64,000 nt of DNA from IMGVR_UViG_3300032236_001850:62001-126000, one strand, 5' to 3'. Counted from the first letter of the stretch, positions 4,330 to 39,772 are shown. Numbers and translations are program-made. Notes: generated by a model not told the origin, from the sequence alone.

Positions 4330-5164
4330 CCTTGGTGATCGTATGAAGGAATTCTACGAAGACCGTTTTAGATATTATGTTCCACGCAGAACATACACAT
4401 TAATCAGAATTGACGGGAAAGCCTTCCACACCTACACAAAAGGTTTGGAGTCACCATTTGATGCAGGATTAATTGCAGACATGAATGAGACTACTGCCTA
4501 CCTTTGTAAAAATATTCAAGGTGCAAAATTTGGCTATGTTCAATCGGATGAGATCAGCATACTTATTACTGATTTTGATGAGAGAGACACCCAGATGTGG
4601 TTTGACGGAAATCTACAAAAGATGGCTTCTGTTGCAGCTTCTATGGCTACATCAAAATTCAACGAATTAAGAGTAGTCAGAGTCCTTAGAAAATACGAAT
4701 GCCAATTTGATACACCATTACAAATGGACACCGATTCGATATTAGAATTTCTTTCTAAGATTAAAAAAGCGGAGTTCGATGCTAGAGTATTTCAGATTCC
4801 ACAAAAAAGCGAGGTTGAGAACTATTTCATCTTCAGACAACAAGACGGTACCAGAAACTCCGTCCAGTCGGTTGCTCAGAGCCTATATTCACAAAGTGAA
4901 TTAAATGGCAAGAAGGAGAAGGATATGCAGGAGATGATTTTTCAAAAAGGTATCAACTGGAATGATTACCACTTCAGAGAAAAAAGAGGTGGAATTATTG
5001 CTAAGGTTCCGACAATGATGGAGGGTAAGAATGGTCAGGTTGAAAGACTGAAATGGCAAATGATTCCAACTCCTATATTCACTCAGGAGAGAGAATTCAT
5101 GGACATTATGATTCCAGAGTTTGAAATTAAATCACCTAAATCTGAAGAAGTTGAGGTACAATAG
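4316..5164 (+). CDS. thg1: tRNA-His guanylyltransferase Thg1-like 3'-5' polymerase
   Basis: Motifs IRIDGKAFHTYT, YVQSDEISIL, FDARVF, YFIFRQQD, GINWNDY. Confidence 0.92.
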   Translation: MKNFSLGDRMKEFYEDRFRYYVPRRTYTLIRIDGKAFHTYTKGLESPFDAGLIADMNETTAYLCKNIQGAKFGYVQSDEISILITDFDERDTQMWFDGNLQKMASVAASMATSKFNELRVVRVLRKYECQFDTPLQMDTDSILEFLSKIKKAEFDARVFQIPQKSEVENYFIFRQQDGTRNSVQSVAQSLYSQSELNGKKEKDMQEMIFQKGINWNDYHFREKRGGIIAKVPTMMEGKNGQVERLKWQMIPTPIFTQEREFMDIMIPEFEIKSPKSEEVEVQ

Positions 5165-5390
5165 CATAAATGAAATAGTGTCTTCTCCAGAATGGAAGGA
5201 GTTCATTGATCTTGAAAATAAAGCAGCCGAGGAAAGATTAGCTAACATGACACTCAGAGAAAGAATGGCAGAGGCCATTGATAACATGACAGGACCACAG
5301 GATGGAGAACTAACCATGATTACTGGCAAGTCACAAAGTGGATCTTCGATGATACAAAAATTCTTAGAAAAATACCAAAAAGATGTATAA
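5121..5390 (+). CDS. small hypothetical protein (start uncertain), degenerate helicase-like P-loop segment
   Basis: TGPQDGELTMITGKSQSGSS loosely resembles the DnaB/gp41 Walker A region; true start probably GTG 5179 or ATG 5248. Confidence 0.45.
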   Translation: MKLNHLNLKKLRYNSINEIVSSPEWKEFIDLENKAAEERLANMTLRERMAEAIDNMTGPQDGELTMITGKSQSGSSMIQKFLEKYQKDV

Positions 5391-5643
5391 ACCAAAATAT
5401 ATTATAGCAGACGGAAGTGCAATCATTTTCTCTGCAGCGATAACACATTCCACCATGGCTAGAGGAATGGGTAGAATAGATGGAGCTGGATTTGTTGATT
5501 TTCAAACTGAGGTCGACAGCTTTGGTGAAACCATAATTAAAGCTGTTGCTTACGGTGAGAGCACCTCATTGGACATAAAATCAAGACCCATAGAGGATTC
5601 AGCAATCCTGACAAGACAAATAACAAACGTATTCGGATATTAA
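5383..5643 (+). CDS. hypothetical protein
   Basis: 86 aa ORF, translationally coupled. Confidence 0.75.
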   Translation: MYKPKYIIADGSAIIFSAAITHSTMARGMGRIDGAGFVDFQTEVDSFGETIIKAVAYGESTSLDIKSRPIEDSAILTRQITNVFGY

Positions 5644-5644
5644 T

Positions 5645-6061
5645 ATGACCATATCCATAGCTCAAGCTGATGTACCCAATCTAGTTGGTAACATTTACAC
5701 CAAAGAGGCAATAACTCAAATGTATGAGCAATGCAAGAGTGCGATGGAGAATGGTTTTTTCGGAGGTGTTATACGGGATGACGGCGTTAGTCCACTTGAT
5801 CTATCAAAAGTGACACACCAGGTAAATCAGGTCGATGTGATTGATGGATTTTTAGTTGCTGATGTTTCTTTTATGAGCACACCAGATGGTGAGATTGCTA
5901 GAAACATGGTTGAATCCGCGGCTGGTGTTATAAGACCCACAATTCACGGTACTCTTGATCCAGTAACAAAGGAAATTAAGGTGGCTAAAGTAGTAAGTTT
6001 CGATGTGATACAATACCATGACGATTTTAGATTACATATAACTTGGAAACAAATAAAATAA
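5645..6061 (+). CDS. degenerate T4 gp21-like prohead protease paralog
   Basis: NLVGNIYTKE...LDLSKVTHQV...STPDGEIARNMV aligns by eye to gp21-like NRNGRxYP...LxxVSHxI...TPxGxIxxxL; catalytic His/Ser positions not conserved. Confidence 0.6.
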   Translation: MTISIAQADVPNLVGNIYTKEAITQMYEQCKSAMENGFFGGVIRDDGVSPLDLSKVTHQVNQVDVIDGFLVADVSFMSTPDGEIARNMVESAAGVIRPTIHGTLDPVTKEIKVAKVVSFDVIQYHDDFRLHITWKQIK

Positions 6062-6062
6062 A

Positions 6063-6437
6063 ATGACAGATAAAATATTTCTTTTTATTCTGCTAATACA
6101 CTTTCTAGCAGATTTCGCATTACAAACTGACGATCAAGCAAAGGGTAAAAGCACAGATCCAAAATGGTTAACCTACCACGTTGCTGTTTATTCTGTGATA
6201 TGGTTGATGGCTTCCTGGTTTTATTTTGGAGATTTCAGACAAGCAGCATTCTTTGCAATTGTCACTTTCATCTCCCACTGGTTTACCGATTTCATTACCA
6301 GCAGAATAGGAAAGCCTTTCTGGGACAAAGGTGATTACCACAATGGGTTCGTTGTTGTTGGGTTTGATCAGATCCTACATTATCTTCAATTATGGTACAC
6401 ATTTAAAATCATATTGGAAATAAATGGGACAATATAA
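6063..6437 (+). CDS. DUF3307-like membrane protein
   Basis: LIHFLADFALQT, H..V, SHWFTD, GFDQILH motifs. Confidence 0.75.
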   Translation: MTDKIFLFILLIHFLADFALQTDDQAKGKSTDPKWLTYHVAVYSVIWLMASWFYFGDFRQAAFFAIVTFISHWFTDFITSRIGKPFWDKGDYHNGFVVVGFDQILHYLQLWYTFKIILEINGTI

Positions 6438-6663
6438 CGAGAATCACAAGAAAAAGAAAATCAAAAAGGAGATACAAAAGTGTATAGAATCTCCCGAATA
6501 TTTTCGAGAAAACTATATTGGAATTATTGATCCAGAGACCTACGAGAAGGCATTTCCAAAAATAAAGGAAGGCTTTGAGGGCAAGGTGATAATAACATCA
6601 ACACCTAACGGAGACACACATTTTAAGGACCTTTGGGAAAAAAGCAAAAAAGATTCGGAATAA
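6424..6663 (+). CDS. 79 aa terminase-large-subunit-like miniprotein
   Basis: IQKCIESPEYFRENYI (gp17-like N-terminus) fused to KVIITSTPNGDTHFKDLW (gp17 ATPase coupling region). Confidence 0.6.
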   Translation: MGQYNENHKKKKIKKEIQKCIESPEYFRENYIGIIDPETYEKAFPKIKEGFEGKVIITSTPNGDTHFKDLWEKSKKDSE

Positions 6664-6664
6664 A

Positions 6665-6697
6665 TTTTTTTATTTCGAATCTTTTTTTTATATTTGC
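6665..6697 (+). promoter_or_regulatory. early/host-sigma promoter
   Basis: TTTTTTTATTTCGAA...TATATTTGC. Confidence 0.8.
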
Positions 6698-6712
6698 ATA
6701 TAATTTAATGAT

Positions 6713-7459
6713 ATGAACGAAGAATTATTTAATAAAGCACTTCCCAAATGGCCAGCAATAGTAGTTGTTGGTGAACCTGTCACTGAACAACAAGCCATGG
6801 CTATCAATGTTATGACAGACAGATTTAGTTTCTGCACAAATGACAGAAAGTTTGAAAAACAAATTCATAAATTGATCTATGAAGTTGATGAATCCTGGAG
6901 CGATCTCACTGATGCACTCAAGGAAAAACACAACACTGATTTCAATGGAGCATGGGACATAAAAGAATCAATCTCAAAAAAATACGGAGCTCTAGAACTT
7001 AACTACATGAGTAATTCCAGAATCGTTTCTTCATGGCTTGGCGGACCACACGGATGGTGCAACTGGGACGGCACAATAGGATCAAGCAACTATAATATTG
7101 GTAAATGGCCTAGTGTTCGCGATGTTTATGAAGACTGCGTTAAGATAGCAGAAGCCTTTCCTTTCCTTAATATGAAAGTGCAATTGATGAACCAGGAGGC
7201 TGGAGAAGACGACGAACAACTGGAAGTCATTGTTGAGTACTCAATAAAAGATGGCGAAGTCGACATGTACGAACCAACAGAAATTCTAAAAACCCCTGCC
7301 TTTGGTAGTGCTGATATGTATGCCAGATTTAATAATCCACATGCCGAAAGAGGATGCACAATAGAAAAACTGGAGGAAGCTCTGAAAGTTAGTGAATTAT
7401 ATTCGTCAACCAAAGAGAGACTATACAAAAACGAATTTTGGAACAAATTAGAATCATAA
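6713..7459 (+). CDS. hypothetical protein
   Basis: 248 aa ORF after promoter. Confidence 0.85.
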   Translation: MNEELFNKALPKWPAIVVVGEPVTEQQAMAINVMTDRFSFCTNDRKFEKQIHKLIYEVDESWSDLTDALKEKHNTDFNGAWDIKESISKKYGALELNYMSNSRIVSSWLGGPHGWCNWDGTIGSSNYNIGKWPSVRDVYEDCVKIAEAFPFLNMKVQLMNQEAGEDDEQLEVIVEYSIKDGEVDMYEPTEILKTPAFGSADMYARFNNPHAERGCTIEKLEEALKVSELYSSTKERLYKNEFWNKLES

Positions 7460-7471
7460 AAAATAAAAGCA

Positions 7472-8404
7472 ATGGTATTAAATCTTTCTGAACCGTGCAG
7501 CTACGGTATCAAATTCAAAGTCTCTAAATTTCCTGATGGACAACAAGCCATCACTATATTAGAGGGAGAAGTTCTCAAATACAACATGTTTGAGAAATTG
7601 GAACCCGTGGTAATAAAATCAAGAATAACATCCTTCTTGGATCTTGAGTTAGTTATCTGTGCAAATAGAGCTCTTAAGGAACTTGGTGTTAAAGAAACTT
7701 CACTCGAGATATCATATTTATTGGGTGCAAGATCCGATAGAAAATTCGAAACCGGAAGCGTTAATTACATCAAGGAGATACTTGCTCCAATCATCAACGC
7801 ACAGAATTTTTCAAGAGTAACGGTACTTGATCCACATTCGGACGTAACTGAAGCGTGTATCAACAACTTCAAAAAGGAAACTCAATGGAGTCAAGGGTTG
7901 ATAACATTTGTGCTACGTGATTATTTCGTCGGTGGAAGCACGGACTATTCCAAAATGAGATTAGTATCTCCGGATGCTGGTGCTCTTAAGAAAGTTTATG
8001 ATGTTGCCGAGTCTATCGGGTATAGTCACGACATAGTTATAGCATCGAAACACAGAGATGTTAAAACTGGAAAAATCACACACACTGATGTTCCAATCTC
8101 GGTACATGACGTGGATAAAGATTTCTTCATACTGGATGATATTTGTGACGGTGGTAGAACCTTTATCGAGATTGCTAAGGCAATCAAAACGAAACAATCA
8201 ATTTCCAGCGCGGTTCATCCAGAGAATCACGGTAAGATTTTTCTGGTTGTAACACATGGAATATTCTCAGCAGGTTTAAAACCACTAAATGAATATTTCG
8301 ATGGTATTTATACAACGAATAGCTATGTTGATATGGCTGATCCTGAATTCTCATTAAGAAACGATAATGAGATGCACAAACTTAAACAATTAAAAGTTAT
8401 CTAA
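7472..8404 (+). CDS. prs: ribose-phosphate pyrophosphokinase family protein (PRS or NARP1 Adps-like)
   Basis: KFPDGQ, YLLGARSDRKF, LDPHSDV, VSPDAGALK, ILDDICDGGRTF, VTHGIFS. Confidence 0.9.
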   Translation: MVLNLSEPCSYGIKFKVSKFPDGQQAITILEGEVLKYNMFEKLEPVVIKSRITSFLDLELVICANRALKELGVKETSLEISYLLGARSDRKFETGSVNYIKEILAPIINAQNFSRVTVLDPHSDVTEACINNFKKETQWSQGLITFVLRDYFVGGSTDYSKMRLVSPDAGALKKVYDVAESIGYSHDIVIASKHRDVKTGKITHTDVPISVHDVDKDFFILDDICDGGRTFIEIAKAIKTKQSISSAVHPENHGKIFLVVTHGIFSAGLKPLNEYFDGIYTTNSYVDMADPEFSLRNDNEMHKLKQLKVI

Positions 8405-8405
8405 T

Positions 8406-8624
8406 ATGGTTAATGCAGAAGAAATTTTCGGTGGGTTTTTTAAATTGGTTGTAGCCGTAATCATCTTTGTATTTTTGGTCGCAGGGGCTTTAGGTATTTT
8501 TTTAGGCAATACAATTTGGGGTAATTCTGAATTTATAGAATCTAAAACAAAAATTGAACCAGCTATCAAATTAACAACTGACGGTAAAAAAGTTGACACG
8601 TTATACGTTTATAAAATAAAATAA
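8406..8624 (+). CDS. small membrane protein
   Basis: One hydrophobic helix, 72 aa. Confidence 0.7.
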   Translation: MVNAEEIFGGFFKLVVAVIIFVFLVAGALGIFLGNTIWGNSEFIESKTKIEPAIKLTTDGKKVDTLYVYKIK

Positions 8625-8626
8625 AA

Positions 8627-8887
8627 ATGAAAGGCATGTTAGAGATTATCATATTGGGAATTGTGTTAGTACTAGGATTCCTATTTATAGGAGACACTGA
8701 AATCACATTCTCTCCGTTCACCTTCAAAATGAATGCTCCATTAAATGCAGCAGGTTGGATCCTATTGTCAATTGGTGTTGCATTAATAAGTGCGAACGCT
8801 AGACAAAAAGGACGCAGAGAGGCTATTGATAACATCGTGGTTCACATCGATAGTAAAGGGACAACTAAACCGGAAGATCTTAAATAA
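8627..8887 (+). CDS. small membrane protein
   Basis: Two hydrophobic segments, 86 aa. Confidence 0.7.
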   Translation: MKGMLEIIILGIVLVLGFLFIGDTEITFSPFTFKMNAPLNAAGWILLSIGVALISANARQKGRREAIDNIVVHIDSKGTTKPEDLK

Positions 8888-9866: not shown

Positions 9867-10067
9867 ATGGCAACATTAAGCGAAGAAAACGCAGAACAAT
9901 TATTTGCGGAAATCGACAACGAGGGACTAGGTTACTGGACTCAACATTATGGATATAAGGGAGAGGAAGATCCCAAGCTAAGGGAGCTTTGCGAAAAAGC
10001 TAAAAAAGCTATGAATGAGCTGGATTCTCATATTCAGGCTATTTTCGATGAATATGGAATAGGTTAA
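9867..10067 (+). CDS. hypothetical protein
   Basis: 66 aa ORF. Confidence 0.7.
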   Translation: MATLSEENAEQLFAEIDNEGLGYWTQHYGYKGEEDPKLRELCEKAKKAMNELDSHIQAIFDEYGIG

Positions 10068-10914
10068 AATCATTTTCCCATATTGACACAATATTATAAC
10101 CAAGATCATTTAGATATTTTTCCCTGATCTTGGTTTTTCTATATAAATCACCAAATTTAGTATTATTTACGACATTCACGTCATCATGTCCGTAAATATC
10201 AGGATTTCCGTGCCAGAAATCGCCATTAAATTCATACACAGTTTTTGTCTTGCTACAATATCCATCAACAATATATTTACCTATTCTAACCTGTCTTTCC
10301 TTTATATTCAACGAATCCAACCAAAGATTTTCTTTCACACCAAATCTATCACCACATTTTGGGCATCCCTGTCCGTTAATGTGGTTTCTAGTACGTTGCT
10401 TAAATTCTCCATGCTCCCTACATACTATGGTTATCTTTGTCCTAAGATTTGAATATTCAACCAATGAATAATCATATTTTTCACCATGCACAGATCTAAA
10501 TAGGGATTTTATTTTTTCTGAGTGTATTCTTGTTGATTCTCTTGCACATTTATCACAAGTTCTTCCGCTTAAGTGATTAGCTGGGGATTGTCTGAATTCT
10601 CCATGTTTCTTGCATATTATAGTTACGTGTGGGAAAGATCCATTATATTCCACTTTGGAATAGTCATATTTGTTCCCATGAACTTCAATCGCTCTGTTGA
10701 TGAAGTTTGGATCCTTTGGTTTCATTCTTCTGCATTGATTGCATCCTATACCCCTCATATGATTACTTGCTCTCTGTACAAATCTCCCATGAACTTTGCA
10801 TAATATATTTACCATGGATTGATTGTTTTTATAATCAGCTTCAGAATAATCATACTTATCGCCATGAATACTAACTGAAGCCTCAATAAAATCAGATTTT
10901 GTCAGTTTTTTCAT
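10039..10914 (-). mobile_element. free-standing homing-endonuclease-like gene (repeated Zn-ribbon modules + PD-(D/E)XK/Vsr-like nuclease)
   Basis: Three HGxKYDYSxxxY...IxCxxHGxFxQxxxNHxxGxxCxxC repeats; C-terminal YIVDGY...YEFNGDFWHG...IVSIWE; opposite strand to flanks. Confidence 0.8.
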
Positions 10915-12473: not shown

Positions 12474-12644
12474 ATGGCAAGAATAGAAATCAAAGATCTA
12501 AAATTAAGCTCAATCATTAAGAGGTGTGAGTCTTTAAAATTAGATCCAAAGAGGGTCAAAATAGAAACCGCAATATTCGAGGACATATCAAACCCCGACA
12601 TGTATTACACTAAACTATATTTAAAATATGAAAACAACAAATAA
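12474..12644 (+). CDS. small hypothetical protein (56 aa, not in ORF track)
   Basis: MARIEIKDLKLSSIIKRCESL..., overlaps NADAR start. Confidence 0.55.
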   Translation: MARIEIKDLKLSSIIKRCESLKLDPKRVKIETAIFEDISNPDMYYTKLYLKYENNK

Positions 12645-13107
12645 ATACGTATTTTTCTGGAATGGGATATACTCGCAGTGGCATAAAGCAAATATGACCA
12701 TTGACAGAATAGAATATAATTCATGTGAACAGTACATGATGCATCAAAAAGCAATGCTCTTTGGCGACGAGGAAACTGCAGAATTAATCATGCAGGAAAA
12801 AAATCCAAGAGAGCAAAAGAAATTTGGTAGAAAGATTCAGGGATTCGACAAAGCAATCTGGGACAAGAACTCATTGGCCATAGTTTATCGTGGCAACCTT
12901 GCTAAGTTCTCACAGAACGAGGGTTTAAAAAAGGAGCTTCTTGCAACAGGAGACAGAATCCTTGTTGAAGCATCCCCGGTTGATAACATTTGGGGAATAG
13001 GTCTAGATGAAAAAGCAAAAGGTGTGGAAGATCCAGCAAATTGGAAAGGTCTAAACCTATTAGGTCAAGCAATAACACTTGTGAAAAATGAACTTCGAGG
13101 AGCTTAA
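12628..13107 (+). CDS. NADAR (YbiA-like) family protein
   Basis: FFW...SQW, EQYMMHQKAMLFGD, KKFGRKI, KFSQN, LVEASPVDNIWGIG, NLLGQAI. Confidence 0.93.
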   Translation: MKTTNKYVFFWNGIYSQWHKANMTIDRIEYNSCEQYMMHQKAMLFGDEETAELIMQEKNPREQKKFGRKIQGFDKAIWDKNSLAIVYRGNLAKFSQNEGLKKELLATGDRILVEASPVDNIWGIGLDEKAKGVEDPANWKGLNLLGQAITLVKNELRGA

Positions 13108-16341: not shown

Positions 16342-16664
16342 GAAGAAGAGGACTTGCGGTAAAAAAAGATGGTAAATGGTACGTTTCCATTTGCTGTGGT
16401 GTATGCAATGGTATTGACGAGGTTTGCAATCCAATCGAATACAAGCTGCATCACTCAGACCACAAGGACTTTGATTTTATACATGAAAACACAATGAAAA
16501 ACGTTCCGATATGGACCTCGGTTATTCTTATTGAGGAAGAGGATTTTGTGGGAGGGTGTGGGCATACAGGGTATCCAACTTATACAACCTATGCAAAGCT
16601 TCCCAAGTCAGACCCACCAACATTCATGAACATTAATGAATTGGACAATTTAATAGATTTCTAA
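16335..16664 (+). CDS. hypothetical Cys-containing protein
   Basis: 109 aa; CCGVC...C motif. Confidence 0.65.
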   Translation: MLRRRGLAVKKDGKWYVSICCGVCNGIDEVCNPIEYKLHHSDHKDFDFIHENTMKNVPIWTSVILIEEEDFVGGCGHTGYPTYTTYAKLPKSDPPTFMNINELDNLIDF

Positions 16665-16999
16665 TGGGAAAAATAATATATCTAGCGTCACCTTATAGTC
16701 ATCCGGATGATGATAAGAGACAAGAAAACTTTGAGAAGATATCAAAGATAGCTGCAGATTTATGTGCAGCAGGTCAGGTAGCGTTCTCACCAATAACATA
16801 TGGTCACACCCTCGTCAATTTCAGAGGTGCAATGCCAACAGATTGGTCATTTTGGCAGAACTTCTGTCTAAGCTTTCTAGAGGTCTCTGATGAACTTCAT
16901 GTTTATAAAATGGAAGGCTGGAACCATTCGAGAGGGGTTGCGGAAGAGATAGAATTTGCCATTAAAAATGGCATAGAGGTGAAATATATTGATTGTTAG
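16664..16999 (+). CDS. DUF1937 / nucleoside 2-deoxyribosyltransferase-like protein
   Basis: IYLASPYSH, FSPITYGH, SRGVAEEIEFA. Confidence 0.8.
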   Translation: MGKIIYLASPYSHPDDDKRQENFEKISKIAADLCAAGQVAFSPITYGHTLVNFRGAMPTDWSFWQNFCLSFLEVSDELHVYKMEGWNHSRGVAEEIEFAIKNGIEVKYIDC

Positions 17000-17018
17000 T
17001 TAAAAAATTTCCGAATAA

Positions 17019-17051
17019 TTTTTTTTATTCGGAAATTTTTTTTATATTTGC
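17019..17051 (+). promoter_or_regulatory. early/host-sigma promoter overlapping terminator hairpin
   Basis: TTCCGAATAA/TTATTCGGAA inverted repeat, then TATATTTGC. Confidence 0.8.
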
Positions 17052-17067: not shown

Positions 17068-17169
17068 ATGAAAAAAGAAATACTTTTTATCGGCTTACCT
17101 GGATCTGGAAAGACAACCATTGTTCAAAGAGCACCAAAACACGAATTAATTTATAATCAACAAATATAA
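17068..17169 (+). CDS. 33 aa Walker-A microprotein or kinase remnant (not in ORF track)
   Basis: MKKEILFIGLPGSGKTTIVQRAPKHELIYNQQI; first ORF after the promoter; stop overlaps the next ATG. Confidence 0.6.
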   Translation: MKKEILFIGLPGSGKTTIVQRAPKHELIYNQQI

Positions 17170-17642
17170 TGGCAACATCAATTATCTCATCCGTATTATT
17201 GTCAATCATCTTCACATCTGCGATGCTGGTTCTAATATCAACCATCATGAACTGTGTAAATTATGGCAAATACAAGTACTCGTACAACCTTCTTACCAGT
17301 GGGGAATATCAATTCAACTGGAGTAGAGAAAACATGTATTTCTTTTCATACAAGGATCTTGTTGGTAAATTTTCATCAATAAGTGAAAATTCCGATCTAT
17401 CTTTAGTTTTTACCTTCGACGAAAAAGGTAAATTTAGAGCATTAAGACTACCTTCAACCAATCGAAATTTTGCATTTATCCATGCAGGATTTATTCATAT
17501 GGACCCGTATAGCATCATCTACAGAAGAAAATTTGTAAAATGGTTCGAAGCCAATAAGGAAACATTCCAGGAGAGAACTCCTGCTCAGTTTGAATTCACA
17601 GAGGATGAAATCAAAGATCTATTAGAAATCGAAAACAATTAA
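17169..17642 (+). CDS. hypothetical membrane protein
   Basis: N-terminal hydrophobic helix, 157 aa. Confidence 0.75.
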   Translation: MATSIISSVLLSIIFTSAMLVLISTIMNCVNYGKYKYSYNLLTSGEYQFNWSRENMYFFSYKDLVGKFSSISENSDLSLVFTFDEKGKFRALRLPSTNRNFAFIHAGFIHMDPYSIIYRRKFVKWFEANKETFQERTPAQFEFTEDEIKDLLEIENN

Positions 17643-17646: not shown

Positions 17647-19332
17647 ATGAATAAATTAAACGAAACTTTTAAAATCAACCCGCTTTACGAATCTGACGGG
17701 TACAAAGTTGGCCACAAAGCAATGTTGGCAGAAAACACTTCAGTTGAATATTGGACTTGGATCCCTAGAAGCATCAAGTACATGCACCCATCAATCGATG
17801 GTATCATGTCAGCAGGTGAACAGCTAGTTTGGAGATACATCCACAGCAACTTCCAGGAGTTATTCTTCAACAAACCAGTGGAAGCTGCAGAAAAATTCGG
17901 AAGAGACATGGCTGCATATCTTATGATGGATTACGACGCCGATCATTTTGTGGAACTTCATAAACTTGGATATCTTCCAGTTAGAATCAAAGCCATTCCT
18001 GAAGGGACATTTACAAAACCAAATATTCCACACATGACAGGAATCAACACAGTTGATGGTTATGCTTGGCTTGGACTTTACTTAGAAACTTTGGTTTCTA
18101 AGTTGGCTTGGCAATTACCAACTGCTGCTACCATCGCACACAGATTCAAACAGAATGCTGTTGAATGGGTTACCAAAACAGATCCAGAGAATCTTTGGTT
18201 AGCTGATTTCATGTGTCACGATTTCCACAGTAGAGGTGGTAACCCTTTCACCTCGATTGCAGTTGGTTTAGGACATGCCATGAGTAATTCAGGTAGCGAC
18301 ACATTAAATGTTATTCCAGCATCAAGATACTACTACGATTTTGATGAGAACGAGGTTCCTGTCTATAGTGTTAATGCTTCAGAGCACAGTGTGACATGCA
18401 CAGGTATTTTCTTCTACGAGAAAAAATTAAGAAGCGGTTTATTAAACCACGAAATTGTTTCTTACTACACAAGCACTGCACCTTCAGAGGGATCAGTTCA
18501 GGATCCTGACTATTTAGCAATTGCTGAATTACTTAATCTTCGTGATTGGTTGGAAAAATTTCCTAAAGGTATTCTTTCAGTTGTTTCTGACACGATGAAT
18601 CTATGGAAGGTGATCACTCACATCCTACCAAGACTTAAAAAAGAAATCCTTGCAAGAGATGGCAAATTGGTAATTAGACCTGACAGTGGAGACCCAGTTG
18701 ATATCATTTGTGGAACAACAACTATTAATAACAAGTGGGTAGAAGGAATACTTCCGCAATCTGAGTGTGAAAAGAAAGGTGTAATAGAACTTCTTTGGGA
18801 CATCTTTGGAGGTGAAGAAACTTCAACTGGATACAAAAGATTAGATTCTCACATTGGAGCAATCTACGGGGATTCAATCAACTTAGAAAGACAAATCGCT
18901 ATCTACACAAGATTAGCAGATAAAGGATTTTCAGCTACAAACATCGTGGTTGGTGTTGGTTCTTACACGTATGTTATGCTAACGAGAGACTCCGCTGGAT
19001 ATGCAGCTAAAGGAGCTTGGTTCGCTACTAAGGAATTTAACGGTGTTGATCCTGATGGTCAAACCGATTATATCACAACGGAGTATAACATCTACAAAGA
19101 TCCAGTAACTGATAACGGTACTAAAAAATCATTAAAAGGTTTCTGCCAGGTATTCAATAATAGACCAGATGCTTTACCTCACGAGATTAAGTACGACGGT
19201 AAGGATCAATTGGAAGTAAACACCGAATGCACTAAGGATCAAGAAGCTGGTGGTTTATTAAATATCATCTACGAAGATGGTAAATTCTATAATCAAGTCA
19301 CACTAACAGAGATTAGAGAAAGATTAAAATAA
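17647..19332 (+). CDS. nadV: nicotinamide phosphoribosyltransferase family (NAMPT or NARP1 Namat-like)
   Basis: SDGYKVGH, HDFHSRG, NASEHSVT, SVVSDT, LVIRPDSGDP, IYGDSI, KKSLKG. Confidence 0.93.
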   Translation: MNKLNETFKINPLYESDGYKVGHKAMLAENTSVEYWTWIPRSIKYMHPSIDGIMSAGEQLVWRYIHSNFQELFFNKPVEAAEKFGRDMAAYLMMDYDADHFVELHKLGYLPVRIKAIPEGTFTKPNIPHMTGINTVDGYAWLGLYLETLVSKLAWQLPTAATIAHRFKQNAVEWVTKTDPENLWLADFMCHDFHSRGGNPFTSIAVGLGHAMSNSGSDTLNVIPASRYYYDFDENEVPVYSVNASEHSVTCTGIFFYEKKLRSGLLNHEIVSYYTSTAPSEGSVQDPDYLAIAELLNLRDWLEKFPKGILSVVSDTMNLWKVITHILPRLKKEILARDGKLVIRPDSGDPVDIICGTTTINNKWVEGILPQSECEKKGVIELLWDIFGGEETSTGYKRLDSHIGAIYGDSINLERQIAIYTRLADKGFSATNIVVGVGSYTYVMLTRDSAGYAAKGAWFATKEFNGVDPDGQTDYITTEYNIYKDPVTDNGTKKSLKGFCQVFNNRPDALPHEIKYDGKDQLEVNTECTKDQEAGGLLNIIYEDGKFYNQVTLTEIRERLK

Positions 19333-25288: not shown

Positions 25289-26182
25289 ATGAGTGAAATT
25301 AAAAAACACATATCTGTTGTAGAGACAGATAATGGACACGGAATTCTGAGTTATCTAACAATGGAAATGTCAGATAAATTAAGTCCGGAGGGATTTCCAG
25401 AGATGGGATTGAAAATGAAAACAAAACACGTCGAGCTTGAAACACATCAAGTAAAATCGGTAATCAATTCCGAACAGATGCAAGATCTCGAAGCAATGGG
25501 AATTAACACTTTGGATACGTTAAATTCAACACTACTGAACGAATCCGAAATGGGACAGGAGAAGCAAATTTATAAAAAAATGAAATTGCTTGGTTATGAA
25601 TCCAACAGAAAATTATGGACAAAGTTCCAAAATTTTGCACATAAATGGACGGGATATGTACCAATGTTAGATATCACAAAGGATGGAGCTTTATTAAGAA
25701 AGATGAATTTCATGTCACAGATCATAGCAACATCATCAAGACTTGGTCCTGCTAACTTTGTAATAATTGGTCCAGGTTTATTAGAACAGTTTGTTGCAGA
25801 TCCAGGATTTGTGCACGTTCAACATGATTCTTCATCAACTCCGGGTAAAATCTATTTATGTGGTACATACAGAGATCAGTTTCAAATATTAATAAATCCG
25901 GGACTTCCGTGGACGGATAAAAGAGTAGTTATGGGTAGGGACTCTTCGGTTCAAAATGAAGGCATATTTATGATTGAACACAAGGAAGGATATGTTTTTG
26001 ATAAAAGAGAATATGTGAATCCAACATTTCTTACTCCTATGATCGAAATGGTACTAAGAAAAAGATATGCTTTAACGCACACGCAAAACGCAGCAAAAAA
26101 TTACATAACATTAACATGTACTAATAAAAAACATAATGTTCTTACACACATTATTGAAAAGTACTTCAAAAAGAAAAAATAA
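25289..26182 (+). CDS. truncated T4 gp23/gp24-like capsid protein paralog
   Basis: EQMQDLEAMGI..LNSTLLNE, IATSSRLGPANFVIIGP, CGTYRDQFQILINP, VLRKRYAL parallel the gp23 motifs ELAQDL, RTRRGxGNxII, GxLxGxYxVYIDPY, FKTRYG. Confidence 0.7.
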   Translation: MSEIKKHISVVETDNGHGILSYLTMEMSDKLSPEGFPEMGLKMKTKHVELETHQVKSVINSEQMQDLEAMGINTLDTLNSTLLNESEMGQEKQIYKKMKLLGYESNRKLWTKFQNFAHKWTGYVPMLDITKDGALLRKMNFMSQIIATSSRLGPANFVIIGPGLLEQFVADPGFVHVQHDSSSTPGKIYLCGTYRDQFQILINPGLPWTDKRVVMGRDSSVQNEGIFMIEHKEGYVFDKREYVNPTFLTPMIEMVLRKRYALTHTQNAAKNYITLTCTNKKHNVLTHIIEKYFKKKK

Positions 26183-28225: not shown

Positions 28226-28455
28226 TGAAACACTTACAAATATTTGAAGATTATTCAATAACTTCACCTTACGGAACAACAACGCTTGATAAATTTAAAG
28301 CCTTAAAAAGAGGGGACAATGTTAAATATATGGGTGATGCCTATGTAGTAGAGGAACCTGGCGAATTTGACGTGCTTTTAAGAAGCAGAGACGTTGATGG
28401 TGGCGAGATAAGAGTCAACTACAACATGTTCAAAGCAAAAGGAATGATAGACTAG
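28225..28455 (+). CDS. hypothetical protein with capsid-targeting-like N-terminus
   Basis: MKHLQIFEDY. Confidence 0.75.
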   Translation: MKHLQIFEDYSITSPYGTTTLDKFKALKRGDNVKYMGDAYVVEEPGEFDVLLRSRDVDGGEIRVNYNMFKAKGMID

Positions 28456-29024
28456 GATAGCAAATCCTTAAGAACCCATTCAGTTCTATCTTCTATTGGA
28501 ATAAGTGAAAGATCCACATAAGGAATTCTTTCAAGCTCCAGGTAATTTTTAATTATAGAATCCAGTCTAATTATTTCCTCCCTATTATGGAATCTAATTC
28601 CATCGTTCTCGTCATCCTCTAAGAATGGCGGAACGTAATAGATCTTATGCCACTGACCCAGTGATTTAAGTATTTCCTTTTGTATATGGTTAATAGTTGC
28701 AATATCCTTTAGTGACAATTGTTGACCAAAGAGAGATCTGAAGTAAAAGTAATTTAAAATGGTACTGGAATCGCAAATTACCCATTCCTTAGAATCAACA
28801 TACATTCTTTCCCTTCCTAGCTGTTCATAAAATATAACTAGCTGATCTGTCGGAGTGTCTGGTATTCCCCATTCCGCAATATAATCAGTAGCAGCTTCAC
28901 CAACAAATATAGAATTTTTCTTGTCAATCTTAAGTCTATAATGGACAGAGGTTGCTAAAGTGGACTTACCTGAACTTGGAGCTCCAATCACACAAACCAA
29001 CTTGGATTTTTTTAATTCCTTCAT
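28452..29024 (-). CDS. NadR/Ttd14-type AAA (P-loop kinase) protein
   Basis: VIGAPSSGKSTL, VGEAATDYI, VICDSS, IYYVPP...DGIR. Confidence 0.7.
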   Translation of the reverse strand: MKELKKSKLVCVIGAPSSGKSTLATSVHYRLKIDKKNSIFVGEAATDYIAEWGIPDTPTDQLVIFYEQLGRERMYVDSKEWVICDSSTILNYFYFRSLFGQQLSLKDIATINHIQKEILKSLGQWHKIYYVPPFLEDDENDGIRFHNREEIIRLDSIIKNYLELERIPYVDLSLIPIEDRTEWVLKDLLS

Positions 29025-29150: not shown

Positions 29151-29708
29151 ATGGACACTAGTAAAATTATCAAATTCGGTATTATTGGTTTAGTACTTAT
29201 CGTAATCTTCGGATTATTCTCGAGCGTTATCTCGACAAGCAACGAAGAGGTTGATTTAAGAAATCGCTTCAAACAAAAGATGGATGAACGTACAGCTTTC
29301 TATGACAAGATGTGGAAAACTATCTCTCAGAAATCACAAATCGCTGTTAAGAATGACAGCTCATTCGTTCGTAACGTTAACATCATCATGAGCGGACGTA
29401 AGGATGCTCAAGGTTTAGTTATGAAATGGGTTCAGGAATCTAATCCAAACGCAAACTTCGATCAAGTATCAGCTTTATATGCGGATCTTAGCCGTACCAT
29501 AGAAGGTGAGAGAGATGGTTTCTTCATGCAGGAGAAGATGATTATGGATATTGTATTAGCACATGACAACATCATGACCAAATTCCCATCAGGATTTATT
29601 CTTTCAAGCTTCATGGGTAGAACCCGATTAGTCTACAAGCCAATCACGTCGGATAAAACAGACGATGTTATAAAAACTGGCAAAGACAACGACACTAAAG
29701 TATTCTAA
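29151..29708 (+). CDS. LemA-like membrane-anchored protein
   Basis: N-terminal TM, helical body, C-terminal KFPSGFIL motif. Confidence 0.6.
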   Translation: MDTSKIIKFGIIGLVLIVIFGLFSSVISTSNEEVDLRNRFKQKMDERTAFYDKMWKTISQKSQIAVKNDSSFVRNVNIIMSGRKDAQGLVMKWVQESNPNANFDQVSALYADLSRTIEGERDGFFMQEKMIMDIVLAHDNIMTKFPSGFILSSFMGRTRLVYKPITSDKTDDVIKTGKDNDTKVF

Positions 29709-34709: not shown

Positions 34710-34712
34710 AAC

Positions 34713-37622: not shown

Positions 37623-37699
37623 GGTCCTTAAACTTAATTGGCATGGCGCCAAACTGGCTTCTAAACCCAGCGTCTCCGGTTCGAGTCCGGTAGGGATCA
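37623..37699 (+). tRNA. tRNA, anticodon most consistent with CUA (amber suppressor); alternative reading is degenerate tRNA-Arg(UCU)
   Basis: Acceptor GGTCCTT/AGGGATC+A, T arm CCGG TTCGAGT CCGG, anticodon arm CTGGC TTCTAAA CCCAG (4 WC pairs + C.C); atypical D arm; no encoded CCA. Confidence 0.6.
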
Positions 37700-37713
37700 C
37701 AAAAAACAAAGTC

Positions 37714-38046
37714 ATGAGAGAATTAACATGGACAACATATTACGGTGAGGTCAAAAGATTTTCAGAGATTGATCATCAACATCTATCAAACATTCTTTGG
37801 TTCAGAGAGATTCTAACAGGTGCAAATCTTTGTAACTGCGAAGTTCAAAGAGCATTAAATTCAGAATTGAAGAGATTTGGTGGTAAGCGATTACCTTGGA
37901 AACCATTACCAATTCCACAGGAAATAGAATGGATAAGAGGAGCTGCTTATATAAACCAAAAAGGTGAGATAATAGGAACAATGAAAACACCATCACATTA
38001 TGGTAAAGTTATTGGATCCGTTGCTCATATAGAAAAACTCAACTAG
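37714..38046 (+). CDS. hypothetical protein
   Basis: 110 aa ORF inside RNA cluster. Confidence 0.75.
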   Translation: MRELTWTTYYGEVKRFSEIDHQHLSNILWFREILTGANLCNCEVQRALNSELKRFGGKRLPWKPLPIPQEIEWIRGAAYINQKGEIIGTMKTPSHYGKVIGSVAHIEKLN

Positions 38047-38117
38047 CGGAGAGTAGGGGTAACCCAAAAATAGCTAAGCTGTGTTAAGCGACAGAACTGA
38101 TAATCTGTTAGAAGCTA

Positions 38118-38277
38118 GGTTGGATGGCGGAAAGCTTATAATGTGAGAAATCATGTTATAACGTGGCAGACGCTAGATTAGAGAAAGGACGCGATCGGGG
38201 TTGGAATACCGATAATGGCGAAAATGGAAGAACCAACGCTTTAATTACCATTGTGGGTTCGAATCCCACTTCAACCA
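38118..38277 (+). ncRNA. tRNA-shelled RNA A (160 nt) with D-loop and anticodon-arm insertions
   Basis: GGTTGGA/TTCAACC+A acceptor, GTGGG TTCGAAT CCCAC T arm, Leu-type GCGGAA...TGGCAGACGC D arm split by a GAAA hairpin. Confidence 0.75.
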
Positions 38278-38291
38278 CAAATCAACGATGT

Positions 38292-38368
38292 TAACTACCT
38301 GTGGTATCTACGGGGGCTAGGGAGAAACCTAGAAACTTACTTCGGTAAGTTAAGGAGCAAATGAGTTA
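38292..38368 (+). ncRNA. candidate multi-hairpin structured RNA
   Basis: TAACT/AGTTA closing stem enclosing CCTGTGG/CTACGGG, CTAGG GAGAAA CCTAG and AACTTAC TTCG GTAAGTT. Confidence 0.5.
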
Positions 38369-38519
38369 CAGTTCGGATTTAAACCTTAAAAAAGCTACTG
38401 CTTTAATGATATGTAGATTCAGAATAGCTTGTACTATTTAGGTACCTGAACCATTCAAAGAAGTTTTAGCAGATGATGATATTTTTTAGCTGCGGCGGAA
38501 ATTTTTTGATTCATCAAAC

Positions 38520-38611
38520 AGCCAGGTAGGCACAAGGTCGGTTCGAGTCCGATGGAAGGTCATGGATGACGGGTAGCACCCTGCATGGAGGTTCGATTCC
38601 TTCACTGGCTA
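38520..38611 (+). ncRNA. tRNA-like RNA B (92 nt) with two T-arm-like hairpins
   Basis: AGCCAG/CTGGCT+A acceptor, GGAGG TTCGATT CCTTC T arm, extra TCGG TTCGAGT CCGA; no canonical anticodon arm. Confidence 0.6.
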
Positions 38612-38612
38612 C

Positions 38613-38738
38613 AAAAACATAACAGGATTAAGTTCGACCTTGCCGAGATTAAGCCTCGTATCTTATATTTTTATTACGGTCTTTGCCGACCCAGAAATAT
38701 CGGATATCGCTAGCGTGGTAGCGGGATGTTATGTTTTT
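38613..38738 (+). ncRNA. candidate structured RNA closed by a perfect 12-bp stem
   Basis: AAAAACATAACA (38613-24) / TGTTATGTTTTT (38727-38), internal hairpins CGAG/CTCG, GGTC/GACC, CGCTA/TAGCG. Confidence 0.5.
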
Positions 38739-38742
38739 ATTT

Positions 38743-39024
38743 GATCAGATGGCGGAATTGGTAGACGCACCCCAAAAAACAAAGCATCTGAGGGGCGGTT
38801 AAATAAGGAGGACGCAGACTCCGAATAATCCAGAACAGCAAGGACGTAAGATGAAATGACATCTTCAGCCTTGTGTCGGAAGTTGGGAATTAACCCGTGA
38901 TACCAGAATAACCGATGTTCCAAGGTAGGTTATTCTTTAGGTGTGAGATGAAGACCGTTAAGGTTGAGTGACACAAGGGATTGACAGGGTCCAAATCGTA
39001 CAGGTTCGAATCCTGTTCTGATCA
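38743..39024 (+). ncRNA. tRNA-shelled RNA C (282 nt): Leu-type shell with ~215 nt structured insert replacing the anticodon loop
   Basis: Perfect GATCAGA/TCTGATC+A acceptor, canonical GCGGAATTGGTAGACGC D arm, ACAGG TTCGAAT CCTGT T arm. Confidence 0.8.
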
Positions 39025-39038
39025 CAAAAAAATGGAAT

Positions 39039-39185
39039 ATGACATTTGATGAATGGATTTATAAGGTTTGCTTACATATAAGCAACAGGACAAGAAAGGA
39101 GATTACTGATGTTTATTCATCAATTGATCTAACAGATGCAAAGCTAACATTTCTGGACGGGATTAATCCGGAAGAATATAATTGA
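39039..39185 (+). CDS. small hypothetical protein (48 aa, not in ORF track)
   Basis: MTFDEWIYKVCLHISNRTRKEI...EEYN. Confidence 0.5.
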   Translation: MTFDEWIYKVCLHISNRTRKEITDVYSSIDLTDAKLTFLDGINPEEYN

Positions 39186-39442
39186 GTATGATTGAGTACT
39201 ATGTAGGTATTGATCCTAAAGACAGAGAAAAGTTTGATTCTTATGTTGAATATCTGAATAATGATCAGCAATGCGACCCTAAATGTAAAATAGAGGTTCT
39301 GCATGAATTTGATGATCCTGACGGATACTATACATTTATGATTCAGGGTCATTGGGATTCATACACTAAATTTTTAGGAGAAACCGGATACGGTAGAGAA
39401 ACGGATGGATTTGTTAAATCAATCAATCACTACGAGGAATAG
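39182..39442 (+). CDS. hypothetical protein
   Basis: 86 aa ORF ending in TAG, in frame with next gene. Confidence 0.7.
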   Translation: MSMIEYYVGIDPKDREKFDSYVEYLNNDQQCDPKCKIEVLHEFDDPDGYYTFMIQGHWDSYTKFLGETGYGRETDGFVKSINHYEE

Positions 39443-39445
39443 ATT

Positions 39446-39772
39446 ATGAACGTTGACTTATTTAGACACTGGATTCCAGATCTAAGACTAACTCGGAATA
39501 AGAGTGCTTATGTTGCAAAACAGTGTCCAGTTTGTCCGCGTACACCGCATAGTAAATCATTTAGAATAAACACCAAACTTAAAGTTTGGAAATGTTATCA
39601 GTGTGGCAGAAGTGGTAAATCATTTAACAAAATGATACATTACTTAAAGAAGAGAGACACTAAAAGAAAGGAGTTACAATATTTGAAGAAAATAGGTCGT
39701 CGTCCAAAGTGTGTTCCTATTGACGTTCATTACGGGTGTGAAACGTACTATGAATCTACGTTACCGTTTTGA
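39446..39772 (+). CDS. stand-alone primase-type zinc finger (CHC2-like) protein
   Basis: CPVCP...SFRIN...VWKCYQCGRSG resembles the DnaG Zn-binding domain; no TOPRIM domain. Confidence 0.6.
   Translation: MNVDLFRHWIPDLRLTRNKSAYVAKQCPVCPRTPHSKSFRINTKLKVWKCYQCGRSGKSFNKMIHYLKKRDTKRKELQYLKKIGRRPKCVPIDVHYGCETYYESTLPF

What the first reader, a model, noticed from the sequence alone, without database searches (positions are those of the whole stretch)
5121..39772. Scattered miniature or catalytically dead copies of core phage proteins - possible immune decoys
Seen by motif: prohead protease without catalytic residues (5645), 79 aa terminase splice (6424), truncated capsid protein (25289), lone primase Zn finger (39446), 33 aa Walker A peptide (17068), and a weak helicase P-loop stub (5121). 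All lie in accessory operons. Known: several defence systems are triggered by exactly these proteins (Avs by terminase/portal, CapRel and Lit by major capsid protein, some CBASS by prohead protease). Inference: a panel of decoys or dominant-negatives that occupy host sensors or interfere with competing phages.
Basis: partly seen in the sequence, partly recalled or inferred. Interest (0 to 1): 0.72.

Follow-up and report, generated by a model that had tools for sequence, protein, structure and literature searches.

The report
Degenerate mini-copies of phage head proteins
A 434-kb freshwater jumbo phage keeps small, conserved, catalytically inert copies of its own capsid protein, head protease and DNA-packaging enzyme in accessory operons; homology and selection are shown, but the proposed immune-decoy role is untested, and two of the six listed items are not such copies.

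Summary
The window is bases 62001-126000 of a 434,509-bp phage genome with terminal repeats. It has a T4 gp23-type capsid and probably a Bacteroidota host.

Three of the six items are real:
- 5645-6061 is a 138-aa gp21/S77-fold protein with Asp and Pro at the T4 His85 and Ser140 positions.
- 6424-6663 is a 79-aa protein made of two collinear TerL segments, with no Walker A or B.
- 25289-26182 is a 297-aa core-only gp23/HK97-fold protein.

All three have constant-length homologues, and dN/dS against two syntenic relatives is 0.08-0.19.

The other three items differ:
- 39446-39772 is a conserved stand-alone C4 zinc ribbon like a primase Zn domain. No DnaG-type primase was detected in this phage, and both relatives lack the gene.
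- The 33-aa Walker A ORF at 17068 is an in-frame deletion scar of an AAA_33 kinase that is intact in a relative.
- 5121-5390 is a conserved small gene with no P-loop.

Two more degenerate copies lie outside the window: a 261-aa TerL ATPase paralogue with a dead Walker A, and a 114-aa gp23 N-arm protein.

The most likely mechanism is binding without catalysis through inherited interfaces. The decoy idea is neither supported nor excluded.

The parts
5645..6061 (+). Mini-gp21: a 138-aa protein with the prohead protease (S77) fold that lacks the catalytic dyad. Asp45 sits at the T4 His85 position and Pro98 at the Ser140 position.
   Evidence: dN/dS is 0.17-0.18 against G001 and G002, and it is 55% identical to a third relative.
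6063..6437 (+). DUF3307 membrane protein. It lies between the mini-protease and the mini-TerL, and its end overlaps the mini-TerL start by 14 nt. The same gene order is found in three relatives.
   Evidence: Pfam PF11750 E 1.6e-11 and phrog_2470; synteny.
6424..6663 (+). Mini-TerL: a 79-aa protein made of two collinear TerL segments, the pre-Walker-A helix and the motif III strand-helix. It has no Walker A, no Walker B and no nuclease domain.
   Evidence: Thirteen homologues (76-96% identical) are all 78-79 aa. dN/dS is 0.08 against G001.
6652..6697 (+). Hairpin plus T-run that looks like a terminator and ends the operon, followed by TATATTTG, which resembles the Bacteroidota -7 promoter element. 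The same cassette precedes the ORF at 17068.
   Evidence: Read from the sequence. The promoter assignment is an inference.
25289..26182 (+). Mini-MCP: a 297-aa gp23-family protein with only the HK97-fold core. It lacks the propeptide, the conserved N-arm motif and the insertion domain of the 574-aa MCP.
   Evidence: dN/dS is 0.17-0.19, and identity is 62% and 59% where neighbouring genes are about 82%.
39446..39772 (+). Stand-alone 108-aa C4 zinc ribbon resembling the primase Zn-binding domain, with an invariant C-terminal LPF. It lies in an insertion of about 640 bp (39185-39823) that G001 lacks.
17068..17169 (+). A 33-aa ORF with a Walker A motif. It is an in-frame deletion remnant of an AAA_33/zeta-toxin-like kinase gene.
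5121..5390 (+). Conserved small ORF of unknown function. The true start is probably the TTG near 5151. It has no P-loop.

Best explanation
This is not one system but a mixed set. Three window genes are genuine, selectively maintained, non-catalytic or core-only paralogues of the phage's own head-maturation protease, large terminase and major capsid protein: the mini-gp21 at 5645-6061, the mini-TerL at 6424-6663 and the mini-MCP at 25289-26182. Two more such genes lie elsewhere in the genome. Each keeps the conserved core or a conserved surface segment of its parent. Each has lost the catalytic residues (His/Ser dyad; Walker A and B) and the extensions its parent carries (propeptide, N-arm, insertion domain, scaffold tail, nuclease domain); T4 uses such extensions for incorporation or oligomerisation, which is background knowledge, not tested here. 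I infer that they act in the infected cell as binding-only proteins (pseudoenzymes or interface mimics) that compete for partners or substrates of the full-length proteins. The target is unresolved: it could be the phage's own assembly and packaging machinery, a co-infecting relative, or a host sensor. The other three listed items are unrelated: a strain-variable accessory zinc-ribbon gene, a deletion scar of a kinase gene, and a small conserved ORF with no P-loop. Shown here: homology, loss of catalytic residues, conservation, purifying selection and gene context. Inferred: that the proteins are made, that they bind anything, and what they bind.
For: Homology and loss of catalytic residues. 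Purifying selection against two syntenic relatives: dN/dS is 0.08-0.19, within the range of neighbouring genes. Constant-length families: 22 mini-MCPs, mostly 295-302 aa (three shorter entries); 13 mini-TerL homologues of 78-79 aa; at least 175 clusters of mini-gp21, mostly 125-160 aa, nearly all with FRPR in place of the SSR nucleophile motif. The operon order Thg1 / small ORFs / mini-gp21 / DUF3307 / mini-TerL / 248-aa gene / Prs-like is conserved in three relatives. The minis diverge faster than their parents between G000 and G001: 79%, 72% and 62% identity against 95% for TerL, 97% for the protease and 85% for the MCP. Mini-gp21 relatives in other phages lie among replication or accessory genes rather than head modules, including a 144-aa hypothetical protein (g113) of the cultured Yersinia phage fHe-Yen9-03. 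Two further copies in the same genome are both conserved in G001: a 261-aa TerL ATPase paralogue with Walker A GK changed to GL and Walker B DE changed to DD, and a 114-aa protein that carries only the conserved gp23 N-arm motif.
Against: No expression data exist; no RNA run was listed. The mini-MCP model has only moderate confidence (pLDDT 64.6). The mini-TerL has no confident fold (Atlas pLDDT 0.48), and its N-terminal TerL similarity is weak (z 2.9). dS is near saturation (about 1-1.6), so the dN/dS values are approximate. A virion structural gene (29151-29708, phrog_1383) and fibre genes lie in the same window, so 'accessory region' does not exclude a structural role.
Confidence: 0.5

Rival explanations
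1. Immune decoys or trigger mimics. The minis occupy or shield host sensors that detect TerL, MCP or prohead protease. For example, the dead mini-gp21 could bind the protease-tripwire loops of CBASS CD-NTases without cutting them, and the mini-MCP or mini-TerL could bind Avs-, CapRel- or Lit-type sensors non-productively.
For: The genes sit beside counter-defence-like genes: NADAR at 12628-13107, NAPRTase at 17647-19332, a Prs-like gene at 7472-8404, an AAA_28 kinase, Thg1, and NDT-like genes. They evolve faster than their parents. The parents are exactly the proteins known to trigger defence (PMC12991175, PMC13581612). An extra 114-aa protein carries the gp23 N-arm segment, which lies in the first quarter of gp23, where the review places the conserved, EF-Tu-binding Gol region. 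The exact Gol coordinates were not checked.
Against: No sensor or host is known. Avs sensors bind conserved core folds; if binding is what activates them, a core-only copy should trigger rather than block. CBASS needs protease activity, so a dead copy is neither a trigger nor an evident blocker. The set is not co-inherited. No published precedent was found.
Confidence: 0.2
2. Minor structural or assembly components of this phage's own very large head. The mini-MCP would be a specialised vertex or other minor capsomer protein, analogous to T4 gp24. The mini-gp21 would be a non-catalytic scaffold-core component or a brake on the protease. The mini-TerL would modulate packaging.
For: T4 provides precedents: gp24 is a gp23 paralogue, and T4 encodes Inh, an inhibitor of the prohead protease (annotation). 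Structural genes are scattered in this genome, and one lies 3 kb from the mini-MCP. Purifying selection fits this role.
Against: The mini-MCP aligns only to gp24 173-398 and gp23 210-484 and lacks the N-arm and insertion domain. The mini-gp21 lacks the N- and C-terminal extensions and the scaffold fusion of the real 654-aa protease. All lie about 190-230 kb from the head and packaging genes. Mini-gp21 relatives in other phages lie among replication or accessory genes.
Confidence: 0.2
3. Neutral relics. The minis are leftovers of duplications and deletions in a large, plastic genome, kept by chance like the 33-aa kinase scar.
For: The region shows lineage-specific deletions and fusions: the kinase scar, the G002 deletion of about 6330-8887, and the G002 kinase fusion. 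The mini-TerL looks like an internal in-frame deletion product.
Against: dN/dS is 0.08-0.19 with dS at or above 1. Frames are intact and lengths identical in 13-22 or more homologues down to 55% identity. The mini-gp21 family spans at least 175 clusters at 50% identity.
Confidence: 0.05

Closest known systems
T4 gp21 prohead protease (Peptidase S77; PDB 5jbl)
   Same: The fold and sequence family are shared. hhalign gives probability 95.6%, and Foldseek gives probability 1.0 with TM 0.67. The NxNGRIY, G(E)L, TPxG and RxxG motifs are conserved.
   Different: The protein is only 138 aa. It has Asp at the His85 position and Pro at the Ser140 position. It has no N- or C-terminal extensions and no scaffold fusion, and it is encoded far from the head module. 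It belongs to a large family of small unnamed proteins that almost all carry RPR in place of SSR.
T4 gp24 vertex protein (a paralogue of gp23)
   Same: It is a second, diverged gp23-family HK97-fold protein in a phage with a gp23-type capsid.
   Different: It is 297 aa against 427 aa and aligns only to gp24 173-398 (probability 31%). It lacks the N-arm and insertion domain. It is not next to the MCP gene but sits in an operon of nucleotide-metabolism-like genes.
T4 gp17 large terminase and its shorter in-frame products
   Same: The motif III segment is nearly identical (IITSTPNG..HF.D.W), and the upstream helix is collinear. T4 also makes shorter gp17-derived polypeptides (annotation).
   Different: It is a separate 79-aa gene without Walker A, Walker B or a nuclease domain. 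It is not an internal start of the terminase gene. Its family is conserved at 78-79 aa.
Stand-alone primase zinc-ribbon proteins (PHROGs 360 and 2304, 133-aa profiles named 'DNA primase'; Pfam PF01807)
   Same: It is a small protein consisting of a DnaG-type zinc ribbon.
   Different: It is C4 rather than CHC2 and scores at the cut-off. No DnaG core or Toprim_2 domain was detected in this genome. Its neighbours vary between genomes, and it has an invariant C-terminal LPF.

Membership tests
Peptidase S77 (T4 gp21-type prohead protease) | Homologous sequence and fold | tested here: met
   The query itself has no direct Pfam hit; homology is transitive, through a profile, and structural.
Peptidase S77 (T4 gp21-type prohead protease) | Catalytic His (T4 His85) and Ser (T4 Ser140) | tested here: not met
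   Asp45 and Pro98 occupy the aligned positions. The phage's own protease has GELDHPE and SISSR. The dyad identity comes from PMC12991175.
Peptidase S77 (T4 gp21-type prohead protease) | Encoded in the head module next to the scaffold and MCP genes, or fused to the scaffold | tested here: not met
   The real protease-scaffold gene (654 aa) lies directly upstream of the MCP at G000 296799-298763. The mini lies about 229 kb away.
Gp23-type major capsid protein (PF07068, HK97 fold) | Pfam match above the gathering score, and HK97 fold | tested here: met
   43.1 bits against a cut-off of 24.4. Foldseek matches T4 gp23/gp24 and HK97 with probability 1.0. The model pLDDT is only 64.6.
Gp23-type major capsid protein (PF07068, HK97 fold) | N-terminal propeptide, conserved N-arm motif and insertion domain | tested here: not met
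   The alignment covers MCP 298-550 and gp23 210-484 only. Only a degenerate 16-residue echo of the N-arm motif remains.
T4 gp24-like vertex protein | Forms the capsid pentons and is present in the virion | not testable with these tools
   No virion data exist. The architecture differs from gp24.
Large terminase (Terminase_6N ATPase plus nuclease) | Walker A, Walker B/catalytic Glu, and nuclease domain | tested here: not met
   Only the segments equivalent to gp17 103-127 and 271-298 are present.
Large terminase (Terminase_6N ATPase plus nuclease) | Motif III (TTT/TST coupling motif) segment | tested here: met
   IITSTPNG is identical to the phage's own TerL. hhalign gives probability 86%, E 4.8e-6; the z score against gp17 is 14.5.
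DnaG-type primase | Zinc-ribbon domain | tested here: inconclusive
   24.4-24.9 bits against a cut-off of 24.9. 15 of 27 family clusters carry PF01807. The ligands are C4, not CHC2.
DnaG-type primase | RNA-polymerase (DNAG_N/Toprim) domain in the same protein or genome | tested here: not met
   PF13155 has no match in G000, and PF08275 has none in G000 or G001; controls were positive.
Anti-defence decoy / trigger mimic | Binds a host sensor of the parent protein and prevents its activation | not testable with these tools
   The host and its sensors are unknown.
P-loop NTPase (33-aa ORF at 17068) | Walker A together with the rest of the NTPase fold | tested here: not met
   Walker A is present, but the ORF is the first 21 aa plus the tail of a 163-aa AAA_33 kinase.
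P-loop helicase (ORF at 5121) | Walker A GxxxxGK[ST] | tested here: not met
   The sequence LTMITGKS does not fit, and the best hit has E 0.058.

The most novel reading that the evidence does not exclude
Jumbo and T4-like phages carry a widespread, undescribed class of 'trigger-derived' counter-defence proteins. These would be catalytically dead or core-only copies of the proteins that bacterial immunity senses: the prohead protease, the major capsid protein including a free-standing Gol-like N-arm protein, and the large terminase. They would bind sensors or tripwire loops without activating them. The mini-gp21 family, with at least 175 clusters, would be the founding example.
Probability: 0.15. 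Interest if true: 0.85.

Novelty: new variant of a known kind. Interest (0 to 1): 0.55.

Why it matters
TerL, the major capsid protein and the prohead protease are the phage proteins most often found to trigger bacterial immunity (Avs, CapRel, Lit, CBASS). A phage lineage that keeps inert, fast-evolving extra copies of these three proteins gives concrete candidates for one of two things. They could be a new anti-defence principle, or they could be non-catalytic regulators of giant-capsid assembly. The mini-gp21 family is the most useful lead. It has Pro at the nucleophile position in most members, it is large, and it is present in cultured phages (Yersinia fHe-Yen9-03/04; fold matches to small proteins of Klebsiella Eowyn, Aeromonas 65.2 and Pseudomonas Phabio, not checked by sequence), where it is annotated only as hypothetical. 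It can therefore be tested now.

Tried and rejected
- Megablast of 20 kb of the window against the phage collection found no match. tblastn of the mini-gp21 itself also found nothing.
- T4 gp68, a small prohead core protein, is not related to the mini-gp21 family (hhalign probability 0.2%).
- The idea that the zinc ribbon is the detached Zn domain of a split primase is rejected. No DnaG core or Toprim_2 was found in the genome, and the complete relative G001 lacks the gene.
- The mini-MCP hits in the 634-735-kb 'uncultured phage' records are not mini copies. The one I examined is that phage's full-length 571-aa MCP.
- I tried to infer expression timing from promoter motifs. An ATATATCC motif recurs upstream of the protease gene and of the operon holding the mini-MCP, but it occurs in both orientations and inside genes, so it is inconclusive.
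- Codon-position analysis cannot tell the + ORF at 5247-5390 from the antisense ORF, because their wobble positions coincide. Gene order and a called homologue favour the + strand.
- No RNA runs were listed.
- Rfam at gathering score found nothing in the window.

Full report
WHAT THE WINDOW IS. The window is bases 62001-126000 of a 434,509-bp IMG/VR virus record with direct terminal repeats. It is about 35% G+C and has no close match in the phage collection. The genome has a T4-type head module outside the window: TerL (608 aa, Terminase_6N), a 654-aa S77 protease-scaffold fusion and a 574-aa Gp23-type MCP. The nearest TerL relatives are the 460-640-kb 'uncultured phage' records, Sphingomonas phage PAU, Tenacibaculum phages PTm1/PTm5 and the Prevotella Lak phages. 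Near-identical sequence occurs in pond, freshwater and viral metagenomes. Two relatives were found and are syntenic at about 80% amino-acid identity. G001 is 430 kb, has terminal repeats and is rated complete. G002 is a 79.9-kb fragment. A third, more distant contig of 118,848 bp keeps the same gene order around 4.3-12 kb.

MINI-PROTEASE (5645-6061).
- The 138-aa protein has no direct Pfam or PHROG hit.
- An exhaustive HMMER search found 175 clusters at E <= 1e-3, mostly proteins of 125-160 aa.
- Of 60 aligned members, 32 hit Pfam Peptidase_S77 and 48 hit phrog_207 'head maturation protease'.
- The family profile hits T4 gp21 (PDB 5jbl) at E 1e-7. hhalign against T4 gp21 gives probability 95.6%, E 1e-8, over 135 columns. 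There is no similarity to T4 gp68.
- An AF2 model built on this alignment is confident (pLDDT 92.5, pTM 0.84). Its best PDB match is 5jbl (probability 1.0, TM 0.67, rmsd 3.5 A over 138 columns), followed by herpesvirus proteases.
- In the alignment Asp45 falls on T4 His85 and Pro98 on Ser140. H85A/S140A is the published catalytic-dead gp21 (PMC12991175).
- The phage's own protease keeps GELDHPE and SISSR.
- Across the small-protein family the nucleophile motif SSR is almost always RPR, and the His is kept in only about ten of 60 members. This looks like an old, widespread pseudo-protease lineage rather than a recent accident.
- Members lie among replication or small accessory genes.
- Cultured phages have them as 'hypothetical proteins'. 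One example is the 144-aa g113 of Yersinia phage fHe-Yen9-03, next to PhoH- and SIR2-like genes. It keeps SSR but lacks the His.
- BFVD lists small fold matches, not checked by sequence, in Yersinia fHe-Yen9-04, Klebsiella Eowyn and Miami, Aeromonas 65.2 and AS-szw, and Pseudomonas Phabio and Psa21. The Atlas shows dozens of unnamed viral clusters.
- dN/dS against G001 and G002 is 0.17 and 0.18.

MINI-TERMINASE (6424-6663).
- Thirteen homologues (76-96% identical) are all 78-79 aa.
- Residues 45-71 match T4 gp17 271-298, the motif III strand and helix: z 14.5 against shuffles, with 16 of 27 residues identical. They also share the exact 8-mer IITSTPNG with the phage's own TerL (hhalign probability 86%, E 4.8e-6).
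- Residues 11-34 resemble gp17 103-127 and own TerL 65-77, the '..KC....YF.E.Y' helix before the ATPase core. This similarity is weak (z 2.9 and 1.2) but collinear.
- PHROG TerL hits (2.5e-4, 1.4e-3) and Atlas language-model neighbours with terminase Pfam families agree.
- Walker A, Walker B, the catalytic Glu and the nuclease domain are all absent.
- dN/dS against G001 is 0.08.
- G002 lacks the gene, through a deletion of about 6330-8887.
- The start overlaps the end of a DUF3307 membrane-protein gene by 14 nt. The operon ends in a hairpin plus T-run.

MINI-CAPSID PROTEIN (25289-26182).
- Pfam Gp23 scores E 4.7e-11, above the cut-off, over profile positions 121-366 of 376.
- It is 23% identical to residues 298-550 of the phage's own MCP. 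It aligns to T4 gp23 210-484 and gp24 173-398.
- Twenty-two homologues at 55-90% identity are mostly 295-302 aa; three entries are shorter, at 212-270 aa.
- The AF2 model is of moderate quality (pLDDT 64.6). It shows an E-loop-like hairpin, a spine helix and A- and P-domain strands. It matches T4 gp23/gp24, HK97 and many other capsid proteins over about 280-310 columns with probability 1.0.
- It is therefore a compact, essentially complete HK97 core. It lacks the N-terminal roughly 110 residues (propeptide and conserved N-arm motif) and the insertion of about 170 residues in the real MCP.
- dN/dS is 0.17-0.19. Identity to G001 and G002 is 62% and 59%, where flanking genes are about 82%.
- It is flanked by a nucleoside-deoxyribosyltransferase-like gene, a 155-aa unknown that is translationally coupled to it, and a DprA/LOG-like gene.
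- In one of the huge-phage records that matched, the hit is that phage's full-length MCP. As far as was seen, the mini-MCP is specific to this clade.

ZINC RIBBON (39446-39772).
- The match to the DnaG zinc-ribbon family is borderline: 24.4-24.9 bits against a cut-off of 24.9.
- Twenty-seven related clusters (mostly 95-133 aa) exist, and 15 of them carry PF01807.
- The family keeps CxxC...CxxC, an 'SFRxN.KL.V.KC..CG..GK' core like the DnaG zinc-ribbon motif as I recall it, and an invariant C-terminal LPF.
- It is the only such ribbon in the genome. It is absent from G001 and G002 and lies in an insertion of about 640 bp relative to G001.
- No DnaG core was detected in G000 or G001, and no Toprim_2 domain in G000. 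Its neighbours differ between genomes.
- It is a real accessory gene, but it is not a miniature of a core protein that this phage detectably has.

THE TWO ITEMS THAT FAIL.
- The 33-aa ORF at 17068 has a proper Walker A and its own terminator-promoter-like cassette. G001 has a 163-aa AAA_33/zeta-toxin-like kinase at the same place. The window ORF is that protein's first 21 residues joined in frame to its last few (…ELIYKTQ against …ELIYNQQI). G002 carries a different deletion and fusion. The ORF is a deletion scar of a non-core gene.
- The ORF at 5121-5390 is a conserved small protein, 74% identical to a called 79-aa gene in a relative. It probably starts at the TTG near 5151. It has no Walker A and no significant helicase similarity.

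BEYOND THE WINDOW. A self-comparison of the genome found two more degenerate copies.
- G000 196460-197245 (minus strand) encodes 261 aa homologous to TerL 92-254 (E 1.3e-17). Its Walker A GK is changed to GL and its Walker B DE to DD. It is 77% identical in G001 and full length there.
- G000 419569-419913 encodes 114 aa that carry only the conserved gp23 N-arm motif (…VAPMSAPTGMLFYMD; E 2.5e-7 against the MCP; Pfam Gp23 positions 12-45). It is 65% identical in G001 with dN/dS 0.24.
- A T4 review describes the Gol segment of gp23 as the most conserved region of gp23, located in its first quarter. Gol binds EF-Tu and licenses the Lit protease (PMC3014915). That the N-arm motif corresponds to Gol rests on my recollection of the T4 coordinates and was not verified.

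HOW IT PROBABLY WORKS. What is shown: three window genes (five in the genome) are real, conserved, purifying-selected derivatives of TerL, gp21 and gp23. They have lost the catalytic residues and the parental extensions (used in T4 for incorporation or oligomerisation), and they are encoded far from the head and packaging genes, in operons with accessory metabolic genes. What is inferred: they act by binding without catalysis through inherited interfaces. I put about 0.5 on that general mechanism. Within it, I give roughly equal weight to three targets: the phage's own machinery (timing or regulation), host factors or sensors, and competing phages. Specific rivals and my estimates are:
- immune decoys, 0.2;
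- virion or assembly components, 0.2;
- neutral relics, 0.05.

THE DECOY IDEA. Three points favour it.
- The neighbourhood includes NADAR, NAPRTase, a Prs-like gene, AAA_28, Thg1 and NDT-like genes.
- The minis evolve faster than their parents: 79%, 72% and 62% identity against 95%, 97% and 85%.
- The parents are known triggers of defence.

Four points count against it.
- Avs sensors recognise conserved core folds (PMC13581612). If binding activates them, a look-alike should trigger.
- CBASS CD-NTases respond to gp21 proteolysis, not to its presence, and dead gp21 is inert (PMC12991175).
- The items are not inherited as a set.
- No precedent was found.

A substrate-trap role for the dead protease, shielding tripwire loops, remains possible but is pure inference.

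LIMITS. dS is close to saturation. The mini-MCP model is of moderate confidence, and the mini-TerL has no confident fold.

Noticed in passing
window 38046-39039: This ORF-free stretch holds tRNA-like pieces that ARAGORN misses. Rfam tRNA scores 27.9 bits (gathering score 29) over 160 nt at 38118-38277, which implies an insert of about 85 nt. A second tRNA-like gene at about 38741-39025 appears to be split by about 200 nt, possibly an intron. There are further T-arm-like motifs at 38540-38600.
   Followed up: partly
G000:C1:196460-197245 (minus strand; outside the window; L034:1460-2245): A 261-aa paralogue of the TerL ATPase domain. Its Walker A Lys is replaced (PRQTGLSS) and its Walker B is DD instead of DE. 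It is conserved in G001 at 77% identity.
   Followed up: partly
G000:C1:419569-419913 (outside the window; L035:569-913): A 114-aa protein that carries only the conserved gp23 N-arm motif, which may correspond to the EF-Tu-binding Gol region of T4 gp23. It is conserved in G001 at 65% identity with dN/dS 0.24.
   Followed up: partly
window 6652-6697 and about 17008-17051: The same cassette occurs twice: a hairpin (TTCGGAATAA...TTATTTCGAA type), a T-run, then TATATTTG. The last element resembles the Bacteroidota -7 promoter consensus TAnnTTTG, which fits a Bacteroidota host.
   Followed up: no
window 4316-29024: Accessory and possibly counter-defence genes are densely packed here: Thg1-like (4316-5164), Prs-like (7472-8404), M42 and M28 peptidases, NADAR (12628-13107), two NDT-like genes (16664-16999 and 24687-25226), NAPRTase-family (17647-19332), a 641-aa SPFH/Band-7 protein (21438-23363) and an AAA_28 kinase (28452-29024, minus strand).
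   Followed up: partly
window 10039-10914 (-) and 23414-24610 (-): These are minus-strand genes in a plus-strand region, and they look like homing endonucleases or mobile genes (DUF723/treble-clef/DUF559; D5-like/homing-endonuclease PHROGs). They are absent or highly divergent in the relatives.
   Followed up: no
window 39446-39772, C-terminus: The zinc-ribbon family ends in an invariant ...ES.LPF, which recalls the SSB C-terminal IPF docking tip. This resemblance is from memory and was not tested.
   Followed up: no
window 45474-60746: Four very large proteins are encoded here. Two have collagen triple-helix repeats, and one of those also has DUF5122 beta-propeller repeats, so they are probably fibres. 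They are far more diverged from G001 (35-55% identity, partial alignments) than the rest of the window. By contrast, 29151-29708 (phrog_1383, virion structural protein) is 99% identical.
   Followed up: no
L015:5699-7061 (G001) against window 17068-17642: G001 has the intact kinase gene and two paralogous small membrane proteins (127 and 161 aa) where the window has one (157 aa). G002 fuses the kinase N-terminus to a downstream gene. This spot is a local hotspot for deletions.
   Followed up: partly
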